A stretch of 64,000 bases of DNA from Ascoidea asiatica JCM 7603 (taxonomy: Eukaryota > Fungi > Ascomycota). The notes beneath the pieces were generated by a model. That model did not search any database, had not been told where the DNA came from, and was given only the letters and a program-made list of their open reading frames with translations. The position numbers were made by a program, and so were the translations under genes. Below are positions 1 through 59,463 of this stretch, one piece after another. The first letter of the stretch is position 1, and each line of letters begins with the position of its first letter. The stretch is taken from assembly GCA_001600695.1 (NCBI GenBank), contig BCKQ01000008.1:405031-469030 (forward strand), given 5' to 3'.

Positions 1-329
1 GAATGATTTAGTTATATATTCAAATCCAATAAAACTTTCATCAATTTGGGATTAAATTCATTCTTTATATCTTCAATTGAAACATTTCTTTATCTCTTTT
101 CTTATATATTTCAATAAACATTCAATAAATAATTACACAATTAATAAATAATTTAAAGCTTCTTTTTTTTTGTATGGAATTTAAAAGAAATTTCTAAGGC
201 CGTCATTGAAAAGCATAAGAAATTTAAAGGAAATTTAACAAAAAATTATCAATTTGAATGTAATTAAATAATCAAAGAAGATAAAATTAAGAAAAAAAGT
301 GAATGAAATAGATAATAATATTATTAAAG

Positions 330-6971: not shown

Positions 6972-8489
6972 ATGGATCAAACTGAGATTAAAAAAACAGT
7001 ATCAGATTCTAATTCTGATATTAAATTGAATGATAATCCTCAAACTAATATTTTGGATAATGAACAATTTGATGAAGAATCAAATGTTGGTTTAAAGACA
7101 AAAGAAGAATTGTCTATTTTAAATAGAATTTATTTAAAATTAGATTTAAGAATTATTCCTGCTTTATGGTGTCTTTATTTTTTAACATCTTTTGGTTCTT
7201 CTGCTTATGGTAATTCTTTAACAATGAATGCCGAAGCTGGTCATTCTATAAAATTATCTTTAAATTTAACAGCTCATGATACTTCTACTGCTTCTGCTTT
7301 ATATTATGTTGGTTATATTTTATTTGATGTTCCAATGAATTTAGTAATGACTAAATCTCCACCTCAAGCTTGGTTAGCACGTATTGTAATTTCTTTAGGT
7401 CTTATTTATACATGTTTTGCAGCTTTAAAATCAAGTGGTGGTTTAATTGCAGTTAGATTTGTTACTGGACTTTGTGGTGCTGGTACTTGGCCTGGTTTAA
7501 CTTATTATATTTCTTTATGGTATCCAGTTGAAAGAACTGCAAAAAGAATTGGTTTTTATTTCACTGCAGCTCAATTATCTGCTGCTGCTGCAGGTTTAGT
7601 TGCTGCTGGATTTCAAAAAATGGATATGGTTAGAGGTTTATATGGTTGGAAATGGATGTTTTTAATTTATGGTGTAATTACAATAACTGTTGGATTTTCA
7701 TTAATTTGGTGGTTACCTGATAGACCTGTTGCTCTTAAATCTGATGAATTAGTTAAAAATAAATTCAGTATTAGAAAATATTTACCTGCAAATCGTAAAC
7801 CTTTAACTCCAAAAGAAAGAGAAATTCATTTAAAAGATATGGAAGAAAGATATAGTAAACCATTAAATTGGGGATTTAAAGAAATTGTGATGATTATTTC
7901 AGATATTAGAATTTGGCCATTAATTTTAATGTATTTTGGTGTTGTTGGTACTGGTTTCGGTTTAGCTGTTTTTGGTACAACTATTATTAAAACAAATAAT
8001 CCAACTTTAACTTCAATTAATGTTTCTTTATTATATGCTCCAATTTGGTTATTTGATTTAAGTGCAATTTTATTAATTACTCCATTATCTGATAAATTTA
8101 AAAGATTTAGACCATTAATTTTTTCATGTTCAACTTGTATTATTATTTGTGGTTTATTTGTAATGACTTATGCTCATGGTAAATGGTCAAGATATGGTGG
8201 TTTATTAATTTGTGGTTTTGGTTTAGGTCCAACTGTTCCAACTTGTATGGCAATGACTGCTGATATCTTTGGAAAAAAATATGGGGATGTTGGAACTGCA
8301 GTTGGTTCTGCTCTTGTATCAGGTTTAGGTAATTTAGGTTCTGTTGTTGGTACTTATGCTTTATATTCAGGATGGCCTGCTGATGCTGCTAGATTATATG
8401 AATATAGTAATATGATGTTAGTTTTAATCTGTGGTGTTAGTATTGTCAGTGCTGGTGTTTCTGCTGCCATGTCCAAGTGGTTAAAATAA
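6972..8489 (+). CDS. MFS transporter, anion:cation symporter (Dal5/Tna1/Vht1/Thi73) family
   Basis: 12-TM pattern; KLDLRIIP, RFVTGLCGAG, ISLWYP..RTAKRIGFY, GLYGWKWMFLIYG and WLPDRP are typical of the allantoate/nicotinate permease family. Confidence 0.85.
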   Translation: MDQTEIKKTVSDSNSDIKLNDNPQTNILDNEQFDEESNVGLKTKEELSILNRIYLKLDLRIIPALWCLYFLTSFGSSAYGNSLTMNAEAGHSIKLSLNLTAHDTSTASALYYVGYILFDVPMNLVMTKSPPQAWLARIVISLGLIYTCFAALKSSGGLIAVRFVTGLCGAGTWPGLTYYISLWYPVERTAKRIGFYFTAAQLSAAAAGLVAAGFQKMDMVRGLYGWKWMFLIYGVITITVGFSLIWWLPDRPVALKSDELVKNKFSIRKYLPANRKPLTPKEREIHLKDMEERYSKPLNWGFKEIVMIISDIRIWPLILMYFGVVGTGFGLAVFGTTIIKTNNPTLTSINVSLLYAPIWLFDLSAILLITPLSDKFKRFRPLIFSCSTCIIICGLFVMTYAHGKWSRYGGLLICGFGLGPTVPTCMAMTADIFGKKYGDVGTAVGSALVSGLGNLGSVVGTYALYSGWPADAARLYEYSNMMLVLICGVSIVSAGVSAAMSKWLK

Positions 8490-8926: not shown

Positions 8927-11388
8927 CTATGGTTTGGTTGGTTCATCATTTTCAATGTCAACAATACCTTCAAAGTCTCCATCAGATTCAGAAGAATCTA
9001 CTGATTTTCCCCTGGATTTGATATCAGCAATGATTCTTTCCCTTTCTAAAGCAATAAAAGGAGTTTTGGTTACTTTAGCATAAACCCATAAAATTGAAAT
9101 TCTAACAACAGCAGTTAAAAGACCAAAAATTGCACTAACAACAGGTGCAACAACAAAAGCACCGAAAGCACTCCAATCATCAACATACATACCATTCCAA
9201 ACAATTAATAATTTACCAGCTTCTTTGACATTTCCATGATAACAAACCAAACCATAAATAAATACAGAAATAAAACCAGAAAGTCCACCAATACAAATTT
9301 CCCAACCAGTTAAAAACCAAAAATAAGTATCAGATAAACCTAAACAAATAATTGGAACAATACATGCAGAAACTAAATCTGCAATTAAATAAATTTGTAA
9401 AACATCATCAGCAACTTTTAAAGCAATAACAGCACATGGAACCATTAAAAGAAAAACTAAAACTCTGGCAAACCAAATATTGATTTTATTTCTGAATAAA
9501 TCTAAAGAAATTTCAGAAACCATAGCACTTTGTAATGAATCAAAAGTACAAGTTGAAATAACAACTACAAATAAAATCATTACACCAGATACCCATTTTG
9601 GCATTTTAGATAATAAAATAAAGAAAGAATTACCTCCATCTGGATCATTAACAACAAAATCACCAGTCCAAACACCAATAATACCAGCCCAACCAAATAA
9701 AAATAAAATTATAAATATTAAAAGAGCTGCTAATGAACAACCAATCCATAAATCTTTATCAGTTTTTGAAGCAAAAGTTCTTAACCAAAAATTTGAAAGG
9801 AAACAATTATTTGTAAAAATTGCAATCATTAAAATATAAAGTAATTTCCAAGATAATTTATTTGCAGATAATAATGGTTTCTTAGAAATTGAAGGATCAA
9901 GATCAACATAAGAACCAAAAGCACAAGTTGCAATAATAATTAAAATACAAACAAATCCAGCTTGAATATTATCAGTTAAAAATGAAACTTTAAAACCACC
10001 AATTGAAGTATAAATTGCAGTTACAACACATTCAACAATTACAACAGGTAACCCATCTAAACCTGATAAAGAATTAAAAGCCCAATAAATTGCAGATAAT
10101 TCTGCAATCATATAAAGAAATAAAGTTAAAATTGTAAAAGAAGCAAGATATAATTGAGTTAATAATCCAAATCTTTGATAAGTCCAAGCAGTTAAAACAA
10201 AACCATCTGGACATTTTTTACGAATAATTGGACCTAAGAATGCAAAAAGAAACATTGGTAAAGAACATGATAAAGCATAAACTAAAACACCATGAATACC
10301 AGCAATATTACCGATTTGTGAAAAAGATGTAATTATACCACATCCAAGAGCTATATAAATAATAAAAATAAATTGGTAAGAAAAAAAAGAAAAACAGTTA
10401 GTAAATTATGGAAATTTTTATAACTTAAGAATACTCAAGAATAATAAAAACCTCCGAGGAATTATTTAAAGAAAGTAATTAAGAATCAAAATGGGTTGGA
10501 AGATAAACTAGAAAGGAATAGATAAAGGAAAAGGATAATTTAACCAATAAAAAGGAAAAAGATGGCTGAAAGAAAAAAAGCTTCAGACTTTTAAAAAAAA
10601 GTATAAAAAAGGTAGAGAAAATTTAAGCCAAGTGACTTCAATTAAGTAAAAGTGAAGGAGATTATCAGTTTAGACTTCATTCTTGTACTGATAATTCTTT
10701 TTTTAATAGATTTCATTCCATTCATTTTCTAATTTAATAAATCCAAAATCCAAACAAATCAACTTAAAATACTTCATATATTTAAATAACAACCCAAAGA
10801 ATTTAAATAAATTCTTAAATATAATTAATTAAAATTAATTAAATGAATCAATTAATATAGCAATATTACTTCCTCACGCAAGTATTAACTTGATCGAGTA
10901 TGAAATACGGTATAATCTCAGCCATTTATGTGGCACCCGTAGAATATTGCAATAAATTTCAAAAGGAAACTAAAAAAAAAACAAAGAAAAAAAAAAATTA
11001 AAAAAATAAAAAAAAAGTAGTAGATTCAAAAAGAGAATCAAGTTAGTAGATATATGAAAAGATCGCAATTGGAGGAATACAAACCATAAGCTTATTTTTT
11101 TTTTTTTCTCTTTTTGAAATTTCTTGACTATGAAAATTCTAGAACAATACTATGCGAAGTTTAGCAAACAGGCTATATCAACAATAGAAGACATTAAATG
11201 GAATAAAATGGATTTAAATACGAACCAGATGCTAAAAAATTAAAAGCTAATGCTAAACCCTTTTGGGACCTATTTGCAGATAAAAAAGTTTTATTATCGA
11301 GACAATAAAAACCAAGAGCAACACCAGTGATTAAACAAACTGAATAAGTGACATATGCAATGGCGTTAGAAGCTTGACTTGACAACAT
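8927..11388 (-). CDS. DUR31: Sodium:solute symporter family transporter (Dur31-type, probable thiamine transporter); two exons, 11388-11226 and 10350-8927, 528 aa
   Basis: Joining GCA TCT G|CT CTT GGA gives a continuous ...FNFLASALGCGIITSFSQIGNIAGIHG...YALSCSLPMFLF..., merging ORFs 11194-11418 and 8927-10255. SSS motifs YTSIGGFKVSFLTDNIQ and FWLRTFASK. Intronic TPP riboswitch as known for DUR31/NCU01977 orthologs. Confidence 0.85.
10351..11225 (-). other. Spliceosomal intron (875 nt) of DUR31
   Basis: 5' site GTTCGT at 11225; branchpoint TACTAAC at 10403-10397; 3' site TAG ending at 10351; removal restores the reading frame. A second TACTAAC (11048-11042) with a poly-T tract and AG at 10970 lies inside. 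Confidence 0.9.
10860..10950 (-). ncRNA. TPP (THI-box) riboswitch aptamer
   Basis: Minus strand reads GCAATATTC-TACGG-GT-GCCA-CATAAA-TGGC-TGAGA-TTATA-CCGTA-TTTCATA-CTC-GAT-CAAG-TTAATA-CTTG-CGT-GAG-GA-AGTAATATTGC. Stems: P1 GCAATATT/AATATTGC, P2 TACGG/CCGTA, P3 GCCA/TGGC, P4 CTC/GAG, P5 CAAG/CTTG. Conserved GGUG, CUGAGA, GAU, UAAU and GCG elements are present. Confidence 0.95.
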
Positions 11389-11840
11389 GATGGAATAAAT
11401 GATAAATAACAAAAGCAACGAATATTTTAAAGCAGAAAGAAGTTCTATTCAATCTCAGTTAACGATGACGATGACAATGAAGATAAAGAAGATGAAGAAG
11501 AAGAAGTAAAAGAAAAGGAAAAAGAGAGAAAAGCTTTTGAGAAAGAGGGAAACTGCTCAGCTTTTATACAATTTCGTCAGCAGCAACAGACAAAGAGGAA
11601 AAAATAAGAAAAAACAAGAAAAAGCTCGGCGCTTAAATTAGTCACAGCCACGTGCATCTCCACAAAAAACGCCGCATGCAGTGCCACGCGTACACGCCAC
11701 TCTACGGCGCTAGTTGTTTTTGGACGCCAGAATTGTGGGTGCGCTCTCAAAAGGGTATAACGACAAAAAATATTAATACTAAAAAATTAAATTTGGGAGT
11801 CATCAGACGTTTATTTGCTACAATTATTATTATACATTTT

Positions 11841-14399
11841 TTATATATTTGGATATTGAGGATATTGAATAGATTGATTTGCTTTTTCAACATTTTTAAA
11901 AGTTGGTAATAATGGAGGTTCATTTGTATTATTAAAATTTTCTTCAAAATCAATTTGATTTGATAAAATTGGTCTATTTTCAATTTCAATACCAATATTA
12001 CCATTTTCTTTTTTTAATTTTTTATTGATAATTTCTTCAATTGGATTTAATCTTAATTTTAAAGAATTATTTTGAAAAAAAGGTCCTTCAATTTCACTTT
12101 TATTTTTTAAAATTTCTTTAAATATTAAATTAACTGATAATTGTTCATTATTATTATTATTACCAATTTCATTATTTGTTGAATTAGTTAAATTTGAAAC
12201 ATTTGAAAATAAATAATCAACATAAACATAAACTAAATCATTTATAATTATTGTTGGTAAATATGAATTATATTTTATATAATTTATTAAATTTTTAATT
12301 TGATAAAAATTACCAAATTTTTTCTCAAAATTTAAAAACATTATCCAAAATTCTTTATAATCTTTTAAAATTTCTTCTTTATATAAATTTAAAAAAATTT
12401 TTCTAATATATTTACTAATAATATTAATTTGATTAATTTCTTTTGAATTTATTGAATTATATTTAATTAAAATTAATAATTTTAAATATTCAACAATTAT
12501 TAAACAAATTAATTTTTTCTTAATTAATTTTGAATTTGAATTATTATTAGTATTATTAATTAAAATATCATTTATTGAATCAAATTCTTTATCTAATTTT
12601 ATTTGATTTTGAGATTGATTTCTTTTAATTGGAGTCATGAAATATAAATTAATAATTTTTTCAAAATTTAATATAACTTTATTTATACCTTTCCATCTTT
12701 TTAAGAAATTTATATATAAATGAATTAAATTTTCAATTTCCAGTTCTATGTTATTATTATTATTATTATCATTATTATTATTTTGATAATCATTCGATGA
12801 ATAATTTGAGATTAAAAGATTATAAAAATCATTTGAAATTGAATTTTTTTTAAAATTTTCAAGAAATAAACAATAATTAATTCTTAAAAAATTAAAATTT
12901 ATTGGAATATAAAAATTTAAAGATCTTTTATATAAATTATTAATTTTTTCAAATTCTTTTGAATTTTTTTTTATAAAATATTTAATATAATTTATCCAAA
13001 TAATTTCAAAATTTGCTAAAGGTATTAAAAATCTTTCAAAATTATTTATAATTATTAAATCTTTAATTATTAAATCTTCTTCTTCTTCTTCTTCTTCTTC
13101 TTCATTATCTTTATCATTTATATGATAATTTAAATAGTTTATAATATTTTTTAAATTTGATTTATTTATATTATTTAAATTATTTAAATCATATAAATTA
13201 AATTTTAAATTTATTTTATTTTCAAATAATTCCCAAATTTTATTAACTTTTAATTGAATTTTTTTGAAATTAATTTGAAAAAATTTTTCAATTAATAATT
13301 TATTATCAATTTCATTTTCACTATTAAAAGAAGATATGAATTTATTTAATTTAAATTTATTTAAAATTAATTGATTAATATTAATATTATTTTTAATATT
13401 TTTAATAAATTTATAAAAAATTGTAAAAAATTTACTATATTGATGTAATGGAATTTTAATAATTTTTAATAAAATATTTAAATAATTTTGAATAAATTTT
13501 TTATTAATTGGATTTTTAATTAAATAATTAATTTCATAAAATTTTAAATAATTTTCCCAAATTAAATGTGAATAAAATTGATAACCAGAATTTTGAATTG
13601 CAATTTTATAAATATTTAAAATTTTATCATTATTATTATTATTATAAATTTTAATTAAATAATTTATATAGTTTATCCATAAATCAATTGAAGATGGTAA
13701 GAAATAAAGAGATTTTTTATATAAATTTATAATTTCATCATTTTCTTCATCATCATCATCATCTTCTTCTTCTTCTTCTTCTTCTTTGATATGTTCTTCC
13801 TGATTGTCATTATTTTCTTGTTTGATAATGATTTTTGATTTAGATATATATAAATTTTGATAAAATTGAATATAATCTAACCAAATATTATAATATAAAG
13901 GAAATTTAATTAAGAATTGATTATATAATTTATAAATTAAATCTTTTAAAATTTTAATTTCTTCAATATTATATTGATTATTATCATTATTTTGTAGTTG
14001 AATTGAGATATTTTTAATTGATTGTAAGATTAAATTCCAAGAATTGATATCATTTAAATTTAAATTTATTTTTTTTTTTAAATTTATTAAATTTATAAAA
14101 TTTTTAATTATAAATGAATTATTTAATGGATCATTTAAATCTTTAATTTCTTTTGAATTTAATGAATTTAATGAATTTAAATCATTATCAGATTGAAATT
14201 TTAATTGATTTATTTGTATTGTTCCATAAATTCCAGTTTCTAAATCTTTTTTTGATTCTGATTCTGATTTTGAATTTGATTTTGAATTTGATTCTGGTTT
14301 TGAATTTGATTTTGATTCTGAAGAGGATAATTTGACAGAAGATTTAGTTTGCAAGTTGGGATTGGAAGTGGAGATGAAAGTATTGTTCATTGAAGCCAT
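11841..14399 (-). CDS. U1 snRNP HAT-repeat protein, Prp39/Prp42 family
   Basis: HAT repeats (FLIKFPLYYNIWLDY, FLPSSIDLWINY, GYQFYSHLIWENYLKFYE, IPLHQYSKFF, FERFLIPLANFEIIWINY) and C-terminal ENG..RP..PPLLPTFKNVEKA. First in-frame ATG at 14399; the ORF track start is a non-ATG codon. Confidence 0.8.
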   Translation of the reverse strand: MASMNNTFISTSNPNLQTKSSVKLSSSESKSNSKPESNSKSNSKSESESKKDLETGIYGTIQINQLKFQSDNDLNSLNSLNSKEIKDLNDPLNNSFIIKNFINLINLKKKINLNLNDINSWNLILQSIKNISIQLQNNDNNQYNIEEIKILKDLIYKLYNQFLIKFPLYYNIWLDYIQFYQNLYISKSKIIIKQENNDNQEEHIKEEEEEEEDDDDDEENDEIINLYKKSLYFLPSSIDLWINYINYLIKIYNNNNNDKILNIYKIAIQNSGYQFYSHLIWENYLKFYEINYLIKNPINKKFIQNYLNILLKIIKIPLHQYSKFFTIFYKFIKNIKNNININQLILNKFKLNKFISSFNSENEIDNKLLIEKFFQINFKKIQLKVNKIWELFENKINLKFNLYDLNNLNNINKSNLKNIINYLNYHINDKDNEEEEEEEEEDLIIKDLIIINNFERFLIPLANFEIIWINYIKYFIKKNSKEFEKINNLYKRSLNFYIPINFNFLRINYCLFLENFKKNSISNDFYNLLISNYSSNDYQNNNNDNNNNNNIELEIENLIHLYINFLKRWKGINKVILNFEKIINLYFMTPIKRNQSQNQIKLDKEFDSINDILINNTNNNSNSKLIKKKLICLIIVEYLKLLILIKYNSINSKEINQINIISKYIRKIFLNLYKEEILKDYKEFWIMFLNFEKKFGNFYQIKNLINYIKYNSYLPTIIINDLVYVYVDYLFSNVSNLTNSTNNEIGNNNNNEQLSVNLIFKEILKNKSEIEGPFFQNNSLKLRLNPIEEIINKKLKKENGNIGIEIENRPILSNQIDFEENFNNTNEPPLLPTFKNVEKANQSIQYPQYPNI

Positions 14400-14797
14400 T
14401 CTATTGTAGTTCTCTTTACTCTTTCTTGTATCTGTTGATGGATTGACTTGATCTGTTCCTGATTCACAAGCAACAAAACCACCAAAAGCAACAAAACACA
14501 AAAAAAGAAGCTTTAAAACATTTCAAATTCATTTCAAATTCATTTCAAATTCAAAACAAAACAAAAAAATTCAAAAATCAAAAACAGGACGGCACGTGCG
14601 CGATGGGACAAAACTGTAAATATCCAGGATATAGTGTCCCGTCTCCGGCCGCTGTTTTTAACACCTCACAAAAGAAAAGAAACAAAGAAGAAGAAGAAGA
14701 AATAAAATAAAATAAAGGTTCTTTTGAATTGAGTGATCTGAATTGAATGGAAAGAAAAGAAGAGAAGAAAAGAAGATGTTAATAGAAGTCATTAGTA

Positions 14798-29308: not shown

Positions 29309-29406
29309 TGCTCTGGGGGAGGCTCGAACTCCCGGCCTTCAGCACACCCACAACGCTGGTAGCATTGTTATGAGGCTGACGCTCTAGCCAACTGAGCCAC
29401 CAAAGC
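29309..29406 (-). tRNA. tRNA-Met(CAT), elongator type, with 24-nt intron (29368-29345)
   Basis: Cloverleaf: acceptor GCTTTGG/CCAGAGC, D-arm GCTC/GAGC, anticodon stem TCAGC/GCTGA with loop CT-CAT-A|intron|T, T-arm GGGAG-TTCGAGC-CTCCC. Intron GTTGTGGG pairs with the anticodon loop; a poly-T terminator follows. Confidence 0.95.
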
Positions 29407-52792: not shown

Positions 52793-52864
52793 TGAGAGAT
52801 ACGGGAATCGAACCCATGTCATCTGCTTGGAAGGCAAATATGATAACCACTACACTAATCTCCC
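52793..52864 (-). tRNA. tRNA-Gly(TCC), copy 1
   Basis: GGGAGATTAGTGTAGTGGTTATCATATTTGCCTTCCAAGCAGATGACATGGGTTCGATTCCCGTATCTCTCA: full cloverleaf, anticodon TCC, intact A and B boxes. Confidence 0.95.
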
Positions 52865-59391: not shown

Positions 59392-59463
59392 TGAGAGATA
59401 CGGGAATCGAACCCATGTCATCTGCTTGGAAGGCAAATATGATAACCACTACACCAATCTCCC
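59392..59463 (-). tRNA. tRNA-Gly(TCC), copy 2
   Basis: Identical to the 52793-52864 copy except position 9 (G vs A); T8 terminator about 12 nt downstream. Confidence 0.95.

What the first reader, a model, noticed from the sequence alone, without database searches (positions are those of the whole stretch)
10860..10950. TPP riboswitch hidden in the long intron of a DUR31-type transporter
Seen: every stem (P1-P5) and conserved motif of a TPP aptamer lies on the minus strand within an 875-nt intron, and the ORF track splits this gene in two. Established: fungal TPP riboswitches control splicing of THI4/NMT1 and of the NCU01977/DUR31 transporter, and S. cerevisiae has none. Inference: this transporter imports thiamine and is switched by TPP-dependent splicing. 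P3 is minimal (4 bp plus a 6-nt loop) and lacks the long P3a extension used for long-range 5' splice-site pairing in Neurospora NCU01977, so the switching mechanism is probably different.
Basis: partly seen in the sequence, partly recalled or inferred. Interest (0 to 1): 0.85.

Follow-up and report, generated by a model that had tools for sequence, protein, structure and literature searches.

The report
TPP riboswitch in yeast DUR31 intron
A genuine vitamin-B1 (TPP) sensing RNA lies in the long intron of a thiamine-transporter gene of an Ascoidea-like yeast; this arrangement has been published for budding yeasts since 2018, so it is an ordinary new member, though a conserved second branch site just before the sensor is a useful lead to the still unknown switching mechanism.

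Summary
Rfam RF00059 matches window 10854-10950 (minus strand) at 57.2 bits (gathering score 54.3, E 1.4e-8). It is the only TPP hit in the 20.3-Mb genome.

The aptamer sits in an 875-nt phase-1 intron (11225-10351). The host gene's closest named relative is Ascoidea rubescens DUR31 (71% identity over exon 2). Nine budding-yeast orthologues, the window's gene included, share the intron position, and all nine carry the aptamer there.

The class is already published. Donovan et al. 2018 showed that DUR31 is a thiamin transporter with thiamin-dependent splicing. Their data set already lists the A. rubescens orthologous riboswitch.

In Neurospora NCU01977 the long-range partner is the 3' shoulder of P1, not a P3 extension, and short P3 stems are common in yeast DUR31 aptamers.

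New here:
- Against A. rubescens, only the intron part upstream of the aptamer is conserved (5 co-positioned blocks against about 1 expected, P about 0.003).
- One block is a perfect second TACTAAC box followed by a poly-U tract and an AG 20 nt before P1.
- Babjeviella has a comparable internal TACTAAC and AG, but six other orthologues do not.
- Every base-pairing and accessibility test of how the aptamer might control these elements was non-significant or not conserved.
- No RNA run was listed.

An overlapping window of the same genome was noted before (s1-616489).

The parts
11226..11388 (-). DUR31 exon 1 (ATG 11388; 54 codons plus 1 base)
   Evidence: The peptide aligns end to end with exon 1 of the eight orthologues, all ending ...NF[ILV]AS|G.
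10351..11225 (-). 875-nt phase-1 intron
   Evidence: Donor GUUCGU at 11225-11220 and acceptor AG at 10352-10351. The joint restores the frame (G+CT = Ala) and matches the A. rubescens exon 2 start.
11194..11196 (-). first in-frame stop if the intron is retained (peptide of 64 aa)
   Evidence: ORF 11194..11418.
11207..11218 (-). conserved block UUUAAAUCC, about 270 nt before the aptamer
   Evidence: 11 of 12 identical with A. rubescens at the same distance from the aptamer.
11144..11155 (-). conserved block AUAGUAU(U/G)GU containing a donor-like GUAUUG (11150-11145)
   Evidence: 10 of 12 identical with A. rubescens (GUAUGG there), 102 and 96 nt before the internal TACTAAC. Pairing to the aptamer segment AAUACUUGCG is -9.6 kcal/mol here and -5.3 in A. 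rubescens, not significant.
11040..11049 (-). internal branch-site box: CUACUAACUU (TACTAAC 11048-11042)
   Evidence: 10-nt block identical in A. rubescens at -98/-89 nt from the aptamer. TACTAAC arises in 0.4% and 2.9% of dinucleotide shuffles of the two upstream parts, and in both together in 5e-5. An internal TACTAAC also occurs in Babjeviella.
10970..11041 (-). poly-U tract ending in the first AG after the internal box (AG 10971-10970), 20 nt before P1
   Evidence: Sequence; first AG lies 71 nt after the box. Splicing to this AG would read G+UU, UCC, UUU, UGA: a stop after 3 codons (read).
10956..10967 (-). conserved block UCCUUUU(G/U)AAA directly 5' of P1
   Evidence: 10 of 12 identical with A. 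rubescens.
10854..10950 (-). TPP riboswitch aptamer (RF00059)
   Evidence: 57.2 bits, E 1.4e-8. 89 of 97 positions identical to A. rubescens in alignment A1, while the downstream intron is at chance level. The core is invariant and the base of P3 covaries across nine yeasts.
10397..10403 (-). distal TACTAAC branch site used for the productive splice
   Evidence: Sequence; first AG 45 nt downstream is the acceptor at 10352-10351.
8927..10350 (-). DUR31 exon 2 (473 codons plus stop)
   Evidence: Pfam SSF PF00474. 71% identity to A. rubescens 'Dur3p', which is the DUR31 of Donovan's data set, and 50-58% to many yeast DUR31 proteins. Single copy in the genome.

Best explanation
This is a functional TPP riboswitch in the conserved 5'-proximal intron of the single DUR31 (NCU01977-type, SSF family) thiamine transporter gene of an Ascoidea-like budding yeast. 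Only removal of the whole 875-nt intron, from donor 11225 to acceptor 10351, gives the 528-codon transporter mRNA. When cellular TPP is high the aptamer folds around TPP and productive splicing drops. The transcript then stays unspliced or is spliced at internal sites, meets a stop codon within a few codons, and no transporter is made. This is negative feedback on thiamine uptake. Shown here: the aptamer, its conservation, the gene identity, the conserved intron position and the premature stops. Inferred from orthologues: thiamine transport and the TPP-off direction. Not resolved: which splice signal the aptamer controls. The conserved candidates all lie upstream of the aptamer: a donor-like GUAUUG, an internal TACTAAC, a poly-U tract and an AG.
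For: RF00059 hit over the gathering score, and the only one in the genome. Host gene is SSF, 71% identical to A. rubescens DUR31 and single-copy. Intron position and phase are identical in all nine orthologues, and all nine carry the aptamer there. 89 of 97 aptamer positions are identical to A. rubescens, whereas the 450-nt downstream intron shows no conservation beyond chance (P 0.68 and 0.91). The core motifs are invariant and the base of P3 covaries. An in-frame stop lies 10 codons into the intron. Published experiments: thiamin-dependent splicing of DUR31 in C. parapsilosis and O. polymorpha; pyrithiamine resistance of dur31 deletants; the intron alone confers control in S. cerevisiae (PMC5997356). 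Context: no THI4 or THI5/NMT1 detected, while THI80 and THI6 are present. That fits an organism dependent on uptake or salvage.
Against: There are no expression data for this organism: no RNA run was listed, so thiamine-dependent splicing is untested. The Rfam score is only 2.9 bits above the threshold, because the model's optional hairpin is absent. The donor GUUCGU is the most divergent of the nine orthologues. C. albicans shows that DUR31 can work without a riboswitch, so regulation could be partly or wholly at the promoter. None of the pairing models tested reached significance in both Ascoidea-type introns.
Confidence: 0.82

Rival explanations
1. Decoy branch-site/acceptor platform. The internal TACTAAC (11048-11042), its poly-U tract and the AG at 10971-10970 form a complete 3' splice unit just before the aptamer. 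Splicing from the exon-1 donor to this AG gives a poison mRNA with a stop after 3 codons. The aptamer state decides between this proximal unit and the distal productive one (10403/10351).
For: The box is perfectly conserved as a 10-mer at the same distance from the aptamer in A. rubescens, and an internal TACTAAC with AGs abutting P1 occurs independently in Babjeviella. Chance occurrence is 0.3-2.9% per intron and 5e-5 for both Ascoidea-type introns. Conservation is confined to the upstream part (P 0.003). In the window UAACUUGAUU, which overlaps the branch adenosine, is complementary to GAUCAAGUUA of P5/L5 (best duplex -15.9 kcal/mol, reached by 3% of shuffles). Another first-stage note proposed the same idea (s1-616490).
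Against: The box-to-aptamer pairing is not conserved in A. rubescens (68% of shuffles as good) or Babjeviella (56%). In whole-intron partition functions the box is equally accessible with and without the enforced aptamer fold: 0.96/0.96, 0.59/0.57 and 0.24/0.29. Six of nine riboswitch-bearing orthologues have no internal box, so it cannot be the general DUR31 mechanism. No transcript evidence exists.
Confidence: 0.3
2. NMT1-like / 'Type III' alternative-donor platform. In the TPP-free state the P4-P5 strand masks the conserved donor-like site GUAUUG (11150-11145), so the exon-1 donor is used. TPP binding frees the second donor, and the retained 75 nt carry the stop at 11196-11194.
For: A donor-like site is conserved in A. 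rubescens (GUAUGG) with an in-frame stop between the two donors. CGCA(U)AGUAUU can pair with AAUACUUGCG of the aptamer in the same register in both species, with C-to-U changes that keep G-U pairs. In the window the site goes from 0.09 to 0.45 unpaired when the aptamer fold is enforced. C. parapsilosis DUR31 has a second donor.
Against: Duplex energies are weak (-9.6 and -5.3 kcal/mol) and not better than shuffles (30% and 26%). There is no accessibility change in A. rubescens (0.36/0.35). GUAUUG is a poor donor. Donovan et al. saw little thiamine control of the second donor in C. parapsilosis. The intron is far longer than the 200-400 nt of Type III.
Confidence: 0.2
3. Neurospora-type ('Type II') long-range alpha-alpha' pairing. 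An element within about 60 nt of the donor pairs with the 3' shoulder of P1 when TPP is absent, bringing the splice sites together.
For: Intron length (875 nt) falls in the Type II range. The best partner of the P1' region lies 42-64 nt after the donor (GUUGAUAUAGC with GCUAUAUUAAU, total -15.4 kcal/mol).
Against: 15% of dinucleotide shuffles do as well, and A. rubescens has no counterpart (82%). The pairing overlaps P1 by only two bases. The aptamer ends 503 nt from the acceptor, so pairing would not bring the splice sites together as in Neurospora, where the gap is under 60 nt. The alpha consensus RGCGGYRRY is absent.
Confidence: 0.07
4. The aptamer is an evolutionary relic with no regulatory role in this species.
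For: Riboswitches were lost repeatedly from DUR31, for example in C. albicans. W. ciferrii, Cy. fabianii and K. pastoris have an intronless gene without an aptamer.
Against: 92% identity of the aptamer to A. rubescens within an intron whose downstream part has diverged to chance level. All conserved junction motifs are intact.
Confidence: 0.05

Closest known systems
DUR31 intronic TPP riboswitch of budding yeasts (C. parapsilosis CPAR2_502100, O. polymorpha; Donovan et al. 2018, PMC5997356); the A. rubescens orthologue is listed in their S1 Data Set
   Same: Same host gene (orthologue), same intron position and phase, same strand, same aptamer core. Intron retention gives a premature stop. The A. 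rubescens aptamer is 92% identical.
   Different: The intron is 875 nt against 351 nt in C. parapsilosis. The donor is GUUCGU rather than GUAUGU. An internal TACTAAC/poly-U/AG unit precedes the aptamer, shared with A. rubescens and Babjeviella only. This genome has no THI4, whereas A. rubescens has THI4 with its own riboswitch.
Neurospora crassa NCU01977 TPP riboswitch (Li and Breaker 2013, PMC3597705; 'Type II' of Mukherjee et al. 2018, PMC5882874)
   Same: Orthologous transporter gene, long intron, TPP-off logic expected.
   Different: In Neurospora the aptamer lies under 60 nt from the acceptor and its P1 3' shoulder pairs with a GC-rich alpha element near the donor. Here the aptamer is 503 nt from the acceptor and no significant alpha element is found. 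P3 length is irrelevant to that mechanism.
N. crassa NMT1/THI4 riboswitches (Type I) and the predicted Type III internal-intron switches
   Same: A conserved second donor-like site with a stop between the two donors, and possible pairing of that site with the P4-P5 strand.
   Different: The pairing is weak and not significant. The intron is much longer. An internal branch site and acceptor are not part of those models.

Membership tests
TPP riboswitch aptamer (Rfam RF00059) | Covariance-model score at or above the curated gathering score | tested here: met
   57.2 bits against 54.3, E 1.4e-8, full-length match. Same hit in the whole-genome search.
TPP riboswitch aptamer (Rfam RF00059) | Helices P1-P5 in the canonical arrangement | tested here: met
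   cmscan structure line. The MFE fold of the isolated 106 nt recovers P1, P3, P4 and P5. P2, P4 and P5 are invariant and P3 shows compensatory changes across nine yeasts.
TPP riboswitch aptamer (Rfam RF00059) | Conserved junction motifs that contact the ligand in solved structures (CUGAGA after P3; ACCG; GCG between P5 and P4) | tested here: met
   All present and aligned to the consensus. That these are the contact residues is established structural knowledge, not tested here.
TPP riboswitch aptamer (Rfam RF00059) | Binds TPP | not testable with these tools
   Needs in-line probing, ITC or similar.
Budding-yeast DUR31 intronic riboswitch (Donovan 2018) | Host gene is a DUR31/NCU01977 (clade V SSF) orthologue | tested here: met
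   Best hit is A. rubescens DUR31 at 71%. Hundreds of yeast DUR31 proteins match at 50-58%. The only other match in this genome is 27% identical.
Budding-yeast DUR31 intronic riboswitch (Donovan 2018) | Aptamer on the sense strand inside the 5'-proximal intron | tested here: met
   Intron after ...NFLAS|G, as in the eight orthologues compared. Aptamer hits lie in the same intron in every one.
Budding-yeast DUR31 intronic riboswitch (Donovan 2018) | Unspliced or partly spliced RNA carries a premature stop | tested here: met
   Stop at 11196-11194. Stop 3 codons after the internal AG (sequence).
Budding-yeast DUR31 intronic riboswitch (Donovan 2018) | Thiamine-dependent splicing; the protein transports thiamine | not testable with these tools
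   No RNA run listed. Function rests on published work with orthologues.
NCU01977 'Type II' long-range switch | alpha element within about 60 nt of the donor, complementary to the 3' shoulder of P1 | tested here: inconclusive
   Best duplex -15.4 kcal/mol at +42..64, matched by 15% of shuffles. None in A. rubescens.
NCU01977 'Type II' long-range switch | alpha' (aptamer 3' end) within about 60 nt of the acceptor | tested here: not met
   Aptamer ends at 10854 and the acceptor is at 10351: 503 nt.
'Type III' / NMT1-like alternative-donor switch | Second donor upstream of the aptamer with an in-frame stop between the donors | tested here: met
   GUAUUG at 11150 (GUAUGG in A. rubescens); stop at 11196-11194. 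Use of the site as a donor is untested.
'Type III' / NMT1-like alternative-donor switch | Aptamer strand complementary to the second donor | tested here: inconclusive
   -9.6 and -5.3 kcal/mol in the same register, not better than shuffles.

The most novel reading that the evidence does not exclude
In Ascoidea-type yeasts, and independently in Babjeviella, the DUR31 riboswitch may work on the 3' side of splicing. A complete internal branch site, poly-U tract and AG placed 0-70 nt before P1 would compete with the distal productive branch site and acceptor, and the TPP state of the aptamer would set the choice. Such a branch-site/acceptor expression platform is not among the fungal Types I-IV (PMC5882874). 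Donovan et al. state that the yeast DUR31 mechanism is unknown.
Probability: 0.3. Interest if true: 0.6.

Novelty: new member of a known kind. Interest (0 to 1): 0.3.

Why it matters
As it stands, this adds one more species to a published class, so it matters mainly for correct annotation. The gene is split by an 875-nt intron that ORF-based callers miss. It is the only riboswitch in this genome, which appears to lack THI4 and THI5 and so probably depends on thiamine or precursor uptake. The wider value is as a lead: how DUR31 riboswitches control splicing in budding yeasts is unresolved. The two-species footprint places the conserved, presumably regulatory, sequence entirely upstream of the aptamer and picks out a second TACTAAC box, giving a concrete hypothesis that can be tested by mutation.

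Tried and rejected
1. RNA evidence: the look-up of sequencing runs listed no run.
2. Alpha-alpha' long-range pairing to the P1 3' shoulder: not significant in the window (15% of shuffles), A. rubescens (82%), Saccharomycopsis, C. orthopsilosis, O. polymorpha or Babjeviella. Only Pachysolen stood out.
3. Pairing of the internal TACTAAC region, the donor and the distal branch site with the aptamer: only the window's internal box reached 3% of shuffles, and it was not reproduced in A. rubescens or Babjeviella.
4. Pairing of the conserved donor-like block with the aptamer: not better than shuffles.
5. Accessibility with and without an enforced aptamer fold: no consistent effect on the internal box. 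The productive donor and the distal branch site became slightly less accessible in all three species (0.46 to 0.36, 0.50 to 0.43, 0.58 to 0.33; and 0.69 to 0.58, 0.75 to 0.52, 0.56 to 0.25). These runs had no controls and I give them little weight.
6. The MFE fold of the segment from the internal box to the aptamer suggested an upstream AUUGCGAU pairing with the P1 5' strand in the window. Only a 5-base core is shared with A. rubescens, so this was rejected as unsupported.
7. Synteny of DUR31 with a neighbouring MFS gene, seen in both the window and C. orthopsilosis: the two MFS proteins are unrelated.
8. A micro-exon reading of the segment between the internal AG and the aptamer: no donor-like site there and an immediate stop, so rejected.
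9. THI7 orthology among eight Fur4-family genes was not resolved.
Exons were searched separately by reference.
Full report
**Observation.** The minus strand of window 10854-10950 matches the Rfam TPP riboswitch model RF00059 over its full length, at 57.2 bits (gathering score 54.3, E 1.4e-8). From the sequence and the cmscan alignment:
- P1 is GCAAUAUU (10950-10943) with AAUAUUGC (10867-10860).
- P2 is ACGG with CCGU.
- The CUGAGA junction, P4 (CUCG/UGAG) and P5 (CAAGU/ACUUG) follow.

The isolated 106-nt RNA folds into P1, P3, P4 and P5 as its minimum-energy structure. A search of the whole 20.3-Mb assembly finds this as the only RF00059 match.

**Gene model.** Exon 1 runs from the ATG at 11388 to 11226. 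The intron is 11225-10351, 875 nt, with donor GUUCGU, a TACTAAC at 10403-10397 and the acceptor AG at 10352-10351. Exon 2 is 10350-8927. The joint is phase 1 (G + CT). Exon 2 carries the SSF domain. Its best named relative is the A. rubescens 'Dur3p' at 71% identity, followed by hundreds of yeast proteins at 50-58%. In the own genome the only other match is 27% identical, so the gene is single-copy. The organism is therefore an Ascoidea-like yeast, not A. rubescens itself.

**Comparison with orthologues.** I fetched the orthologous loci of 11 species.
- Eight carry the aptamer: A. rubescens, Saccharomycopsis crataegensis, C. orthopsilosis, O. polymorpha, Pachysolen tannophilus, Babjeviella inositovora, Wickerhamomyces mucosus and C. 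boidinii. Their RF00059 matches score 50-60 bits and lie in the 5' intron.
- In all eight, exon 1 ends at the same residue (...NF[ILV]AS|G), so the intron position and phase are conserved.
- W. ciferrii, Cyberlindnera fabianii and Komagataella pastoris have an intronless gene without an aptamer.
- Across the nine aptamers the core is invariant and the base of P3 covaries.
- P3 is short in O. polymorpha and C. orthopsilosis as well, and long in A. rubescens, Babjeviella and C. boidinii. A minimal P3 is therefore ordinary in this class.

**What is already known.** Donovan et al. 2018 (PMC5997356) reported the following:
- TPP riboswitches are widespread in introns of DUR31 in budding yeasts.
- Deleting DUR31 gives pyrithiamine resistance in C. 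parapsilosis and C. albicans.
- Thiamin represses the productive spliced form in C. parapsilosis and O. polymorpha.
- The intron alone confers control on a reporter in S. cerevisiae, and deleting the aptamer abolishes splicing.
- The mechanism is 'currently unknown'.

Their S1 Data Set lists the A. rubescens DUR31 riboswitch at KV454486.1:94097..93978, which is exactly my hit L002:4558-4677. The class, and the orthologue in the sister species, are thus published.

Li and Breaker 2013 (PMC3597705) show that in N. crassa NCU01977 the element alpha' is the 3' shoulder of P1. It pairs with a GC-rich alpha element near the first donor. Their working construct WT* had a shortened P3. Mukherjee et al. 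2018 describe it the same way. The statement that a P3a extension makes the long-range contact is therefore wrong, and a short P3 is no argument for a different mechanism. Other facts do argue against the Neurospora mechanism here. The aptamer ends 503 nt from the acceptor, against under 60 nt in Neurospora. The best candidate alpha (42-64 nt after the donor, -15.4 kcal/mol) is matched by 15% of dinucleotide shuffles and has no counterpart in A. rubescens.

**Footprinting of the intron.** I aligned the window's intron with that of A. rubescens. The aptamer is 89/97 identical, differing only in the P3 loop region, the P2-P4 junction and one base in the 3' strand of P1. Counting informative 12-mers with at least 10 identities at matching distances from the aptamer gave these results:
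- The upstream part (donor to aptamer) holds 5 conserved blocks against 1.03 expected (P about 0.003).
- The 450-nt part from the aptamer to the distal branch site is at chance level (P 0.68 and 0.91).

Four of the five blocks have a reading:
- UUUAAAUCC (11218-11207).
- AUAGUAU(U/G)GU (11155-11144), with a donor-like GUAUUG.
- CUACUAACUU (11049-11040).
- UCCUUUU(G/U)AAA (10967-10956), just before P1.

The fifth (ATGGTTTGTATT, about 137 nt before the aptamer) has no evident meaning and may be chance.

The third block contains a perfect TACTAAC branch-site box. It is followed by a long poly-U tract and by the first AG at 10971-10970, 20 nt before P1. TACTAAC arises in only 0.4% (window), 2.9% (A. 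rubescens) and 0.3% (Babjeviella) of shuffled upstream segments, and in both Ascoidea-type introns together in 5e-5. Babjeviella also has an internal TACTAAC, with three AGs abutting P1. The other six orthologues have none. Splicing from the exon-1 donor to the internal AG would give a stop after three codons.

**Tests of how the aptamer might control these elements.** All were weak.
- In the window, UAACUUGAUU, which overlaps the branch adenosine, is complementary to GAUCAAGUUA of P5/L5. The best duplex is -15.9 kcal/mol, reached by 3% of shuffles. A. rubescens and Babjeviella show nothing comparable.
- The donor-like block can pair with AAUACUUGCG of the aptamer in the same register in both species, but at only -9.6 and -5.3 kcal/mol, no better than shuffles.
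- Enforcing the aptamer fold in whole-intron partition functions leaves the internal box equally accessible. It slightly lowers the accessibility of the productive donor and the distal branch site in all three species. That trend has the right sign for a TPP-off switch, but it had no control and I give it little weight.
- No RNA run was listed for this sequence, so no isoform could be observed.

**Genome context.**
- Neither the Pfam Thi4 model nor TIGR00292 finds a THI4. The best matches, at about 24-25 bits, are generic nucleotide-binding motifs in long ORFs.
- The NMT1/THI5 model finds nothing.
- Thiamine pyrophosphokinase and THI6 are present.
- A. rubescens has a THI4 with its own riboswitch.

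This species seems to have lost THI4 together with that riboswitch. It probably depends on uptake of thiamine or its precursors, with DUR31 as the riboswitch-controlled entry. Eight Fur4/Thi7-family genes exist, and their orthology was not resolved.

**Verdict.**
- This is a real TPP riboswitch and a new member of a published class.
- The most likely function is TPP-dependent shut-off of productive splicing, inferred from orthologues.
- The conserved internal branch site, poly-U tract and AG before the aptamer form the most interesting lead. I put it at about 0.3 that they act as a riboswitch-controlled decoy. The papers I read describe no such platform.

Noticed in passing
G000 whole genome (L009-L011, L016, L017): No THI4 (Pfam Thi4 and TIGR00292 best about 24-25 bits, in long unrelated ORFs) and no THI5/NMT1 were detected, while THI80 (C3:1891827-1892270) and THI6 (C19:186171-186770) are present. 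A. rubescens keeps THI4 with a riboswitch. This points to a probable thiamine or precursor auxotroph.
   Followed up: partly
L007:2595-2619 with L007:2757-2792 (Pachysolen tannophilus DUR31 intron): A segment 82-106 nt after the donor pairs with the 3' shoulder of P1 and its flank at -18.8 kcal/mol; 0 of 200 dinucleotide shuffles reach this. It is a candidate Neurospora-like alpha-alpha' interaction in a budding yeast.
   Followed up: no
window 11640-11760: A GC-rich island of about 120 nt in the otherwise very AT-rich spacer between the PRP39-like gene and the DUR31 start. It has no Rfam match. Another first-stage note (s1-616983) links it to a module upstream of a velvet gene.
   Followed up: no
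window 6972-8489 (+): A 505-aa MFS_1 transporter lies convergent with DUR31. It is unrelated to the MFS gene next to C. orthopsilosis DUR31 (BLASTP E 0.29). A first-stage note calls it VHT1-like; I did not test this.
   Followed up: partly
window 11841-14501 (-): An 886-aa ORF with PRP39 N- and C-terminal HAT repeats (a U1 snRNP splicing factor), with long Asn/Lys/Ile-rich and acidic low-complexity insertions.
   Followed up: no
window 52793-52864, 59392-59463, 29309-29406 (all -): Three tRNA genes. The first two are near-identical copies 6.6 kb apart. The third carries a 26-nt intron.
   Followed up: no
L002:8732-8824 (-) (A. rubescens): An snR40-like C/D box snoRNA match at 49.3 bits, just under the gathering score of 50.
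   Followed up: no
L006, L013, L015: The DUR31 orthologues of W. ciferrii, Cyberlindnera fabianii and Komagataella pastoris are called as single uninterrupted ORFs, and no TPP aptamer is found in the loci. These look like independent losses of intron and riboswitch.
   Followed up: partly
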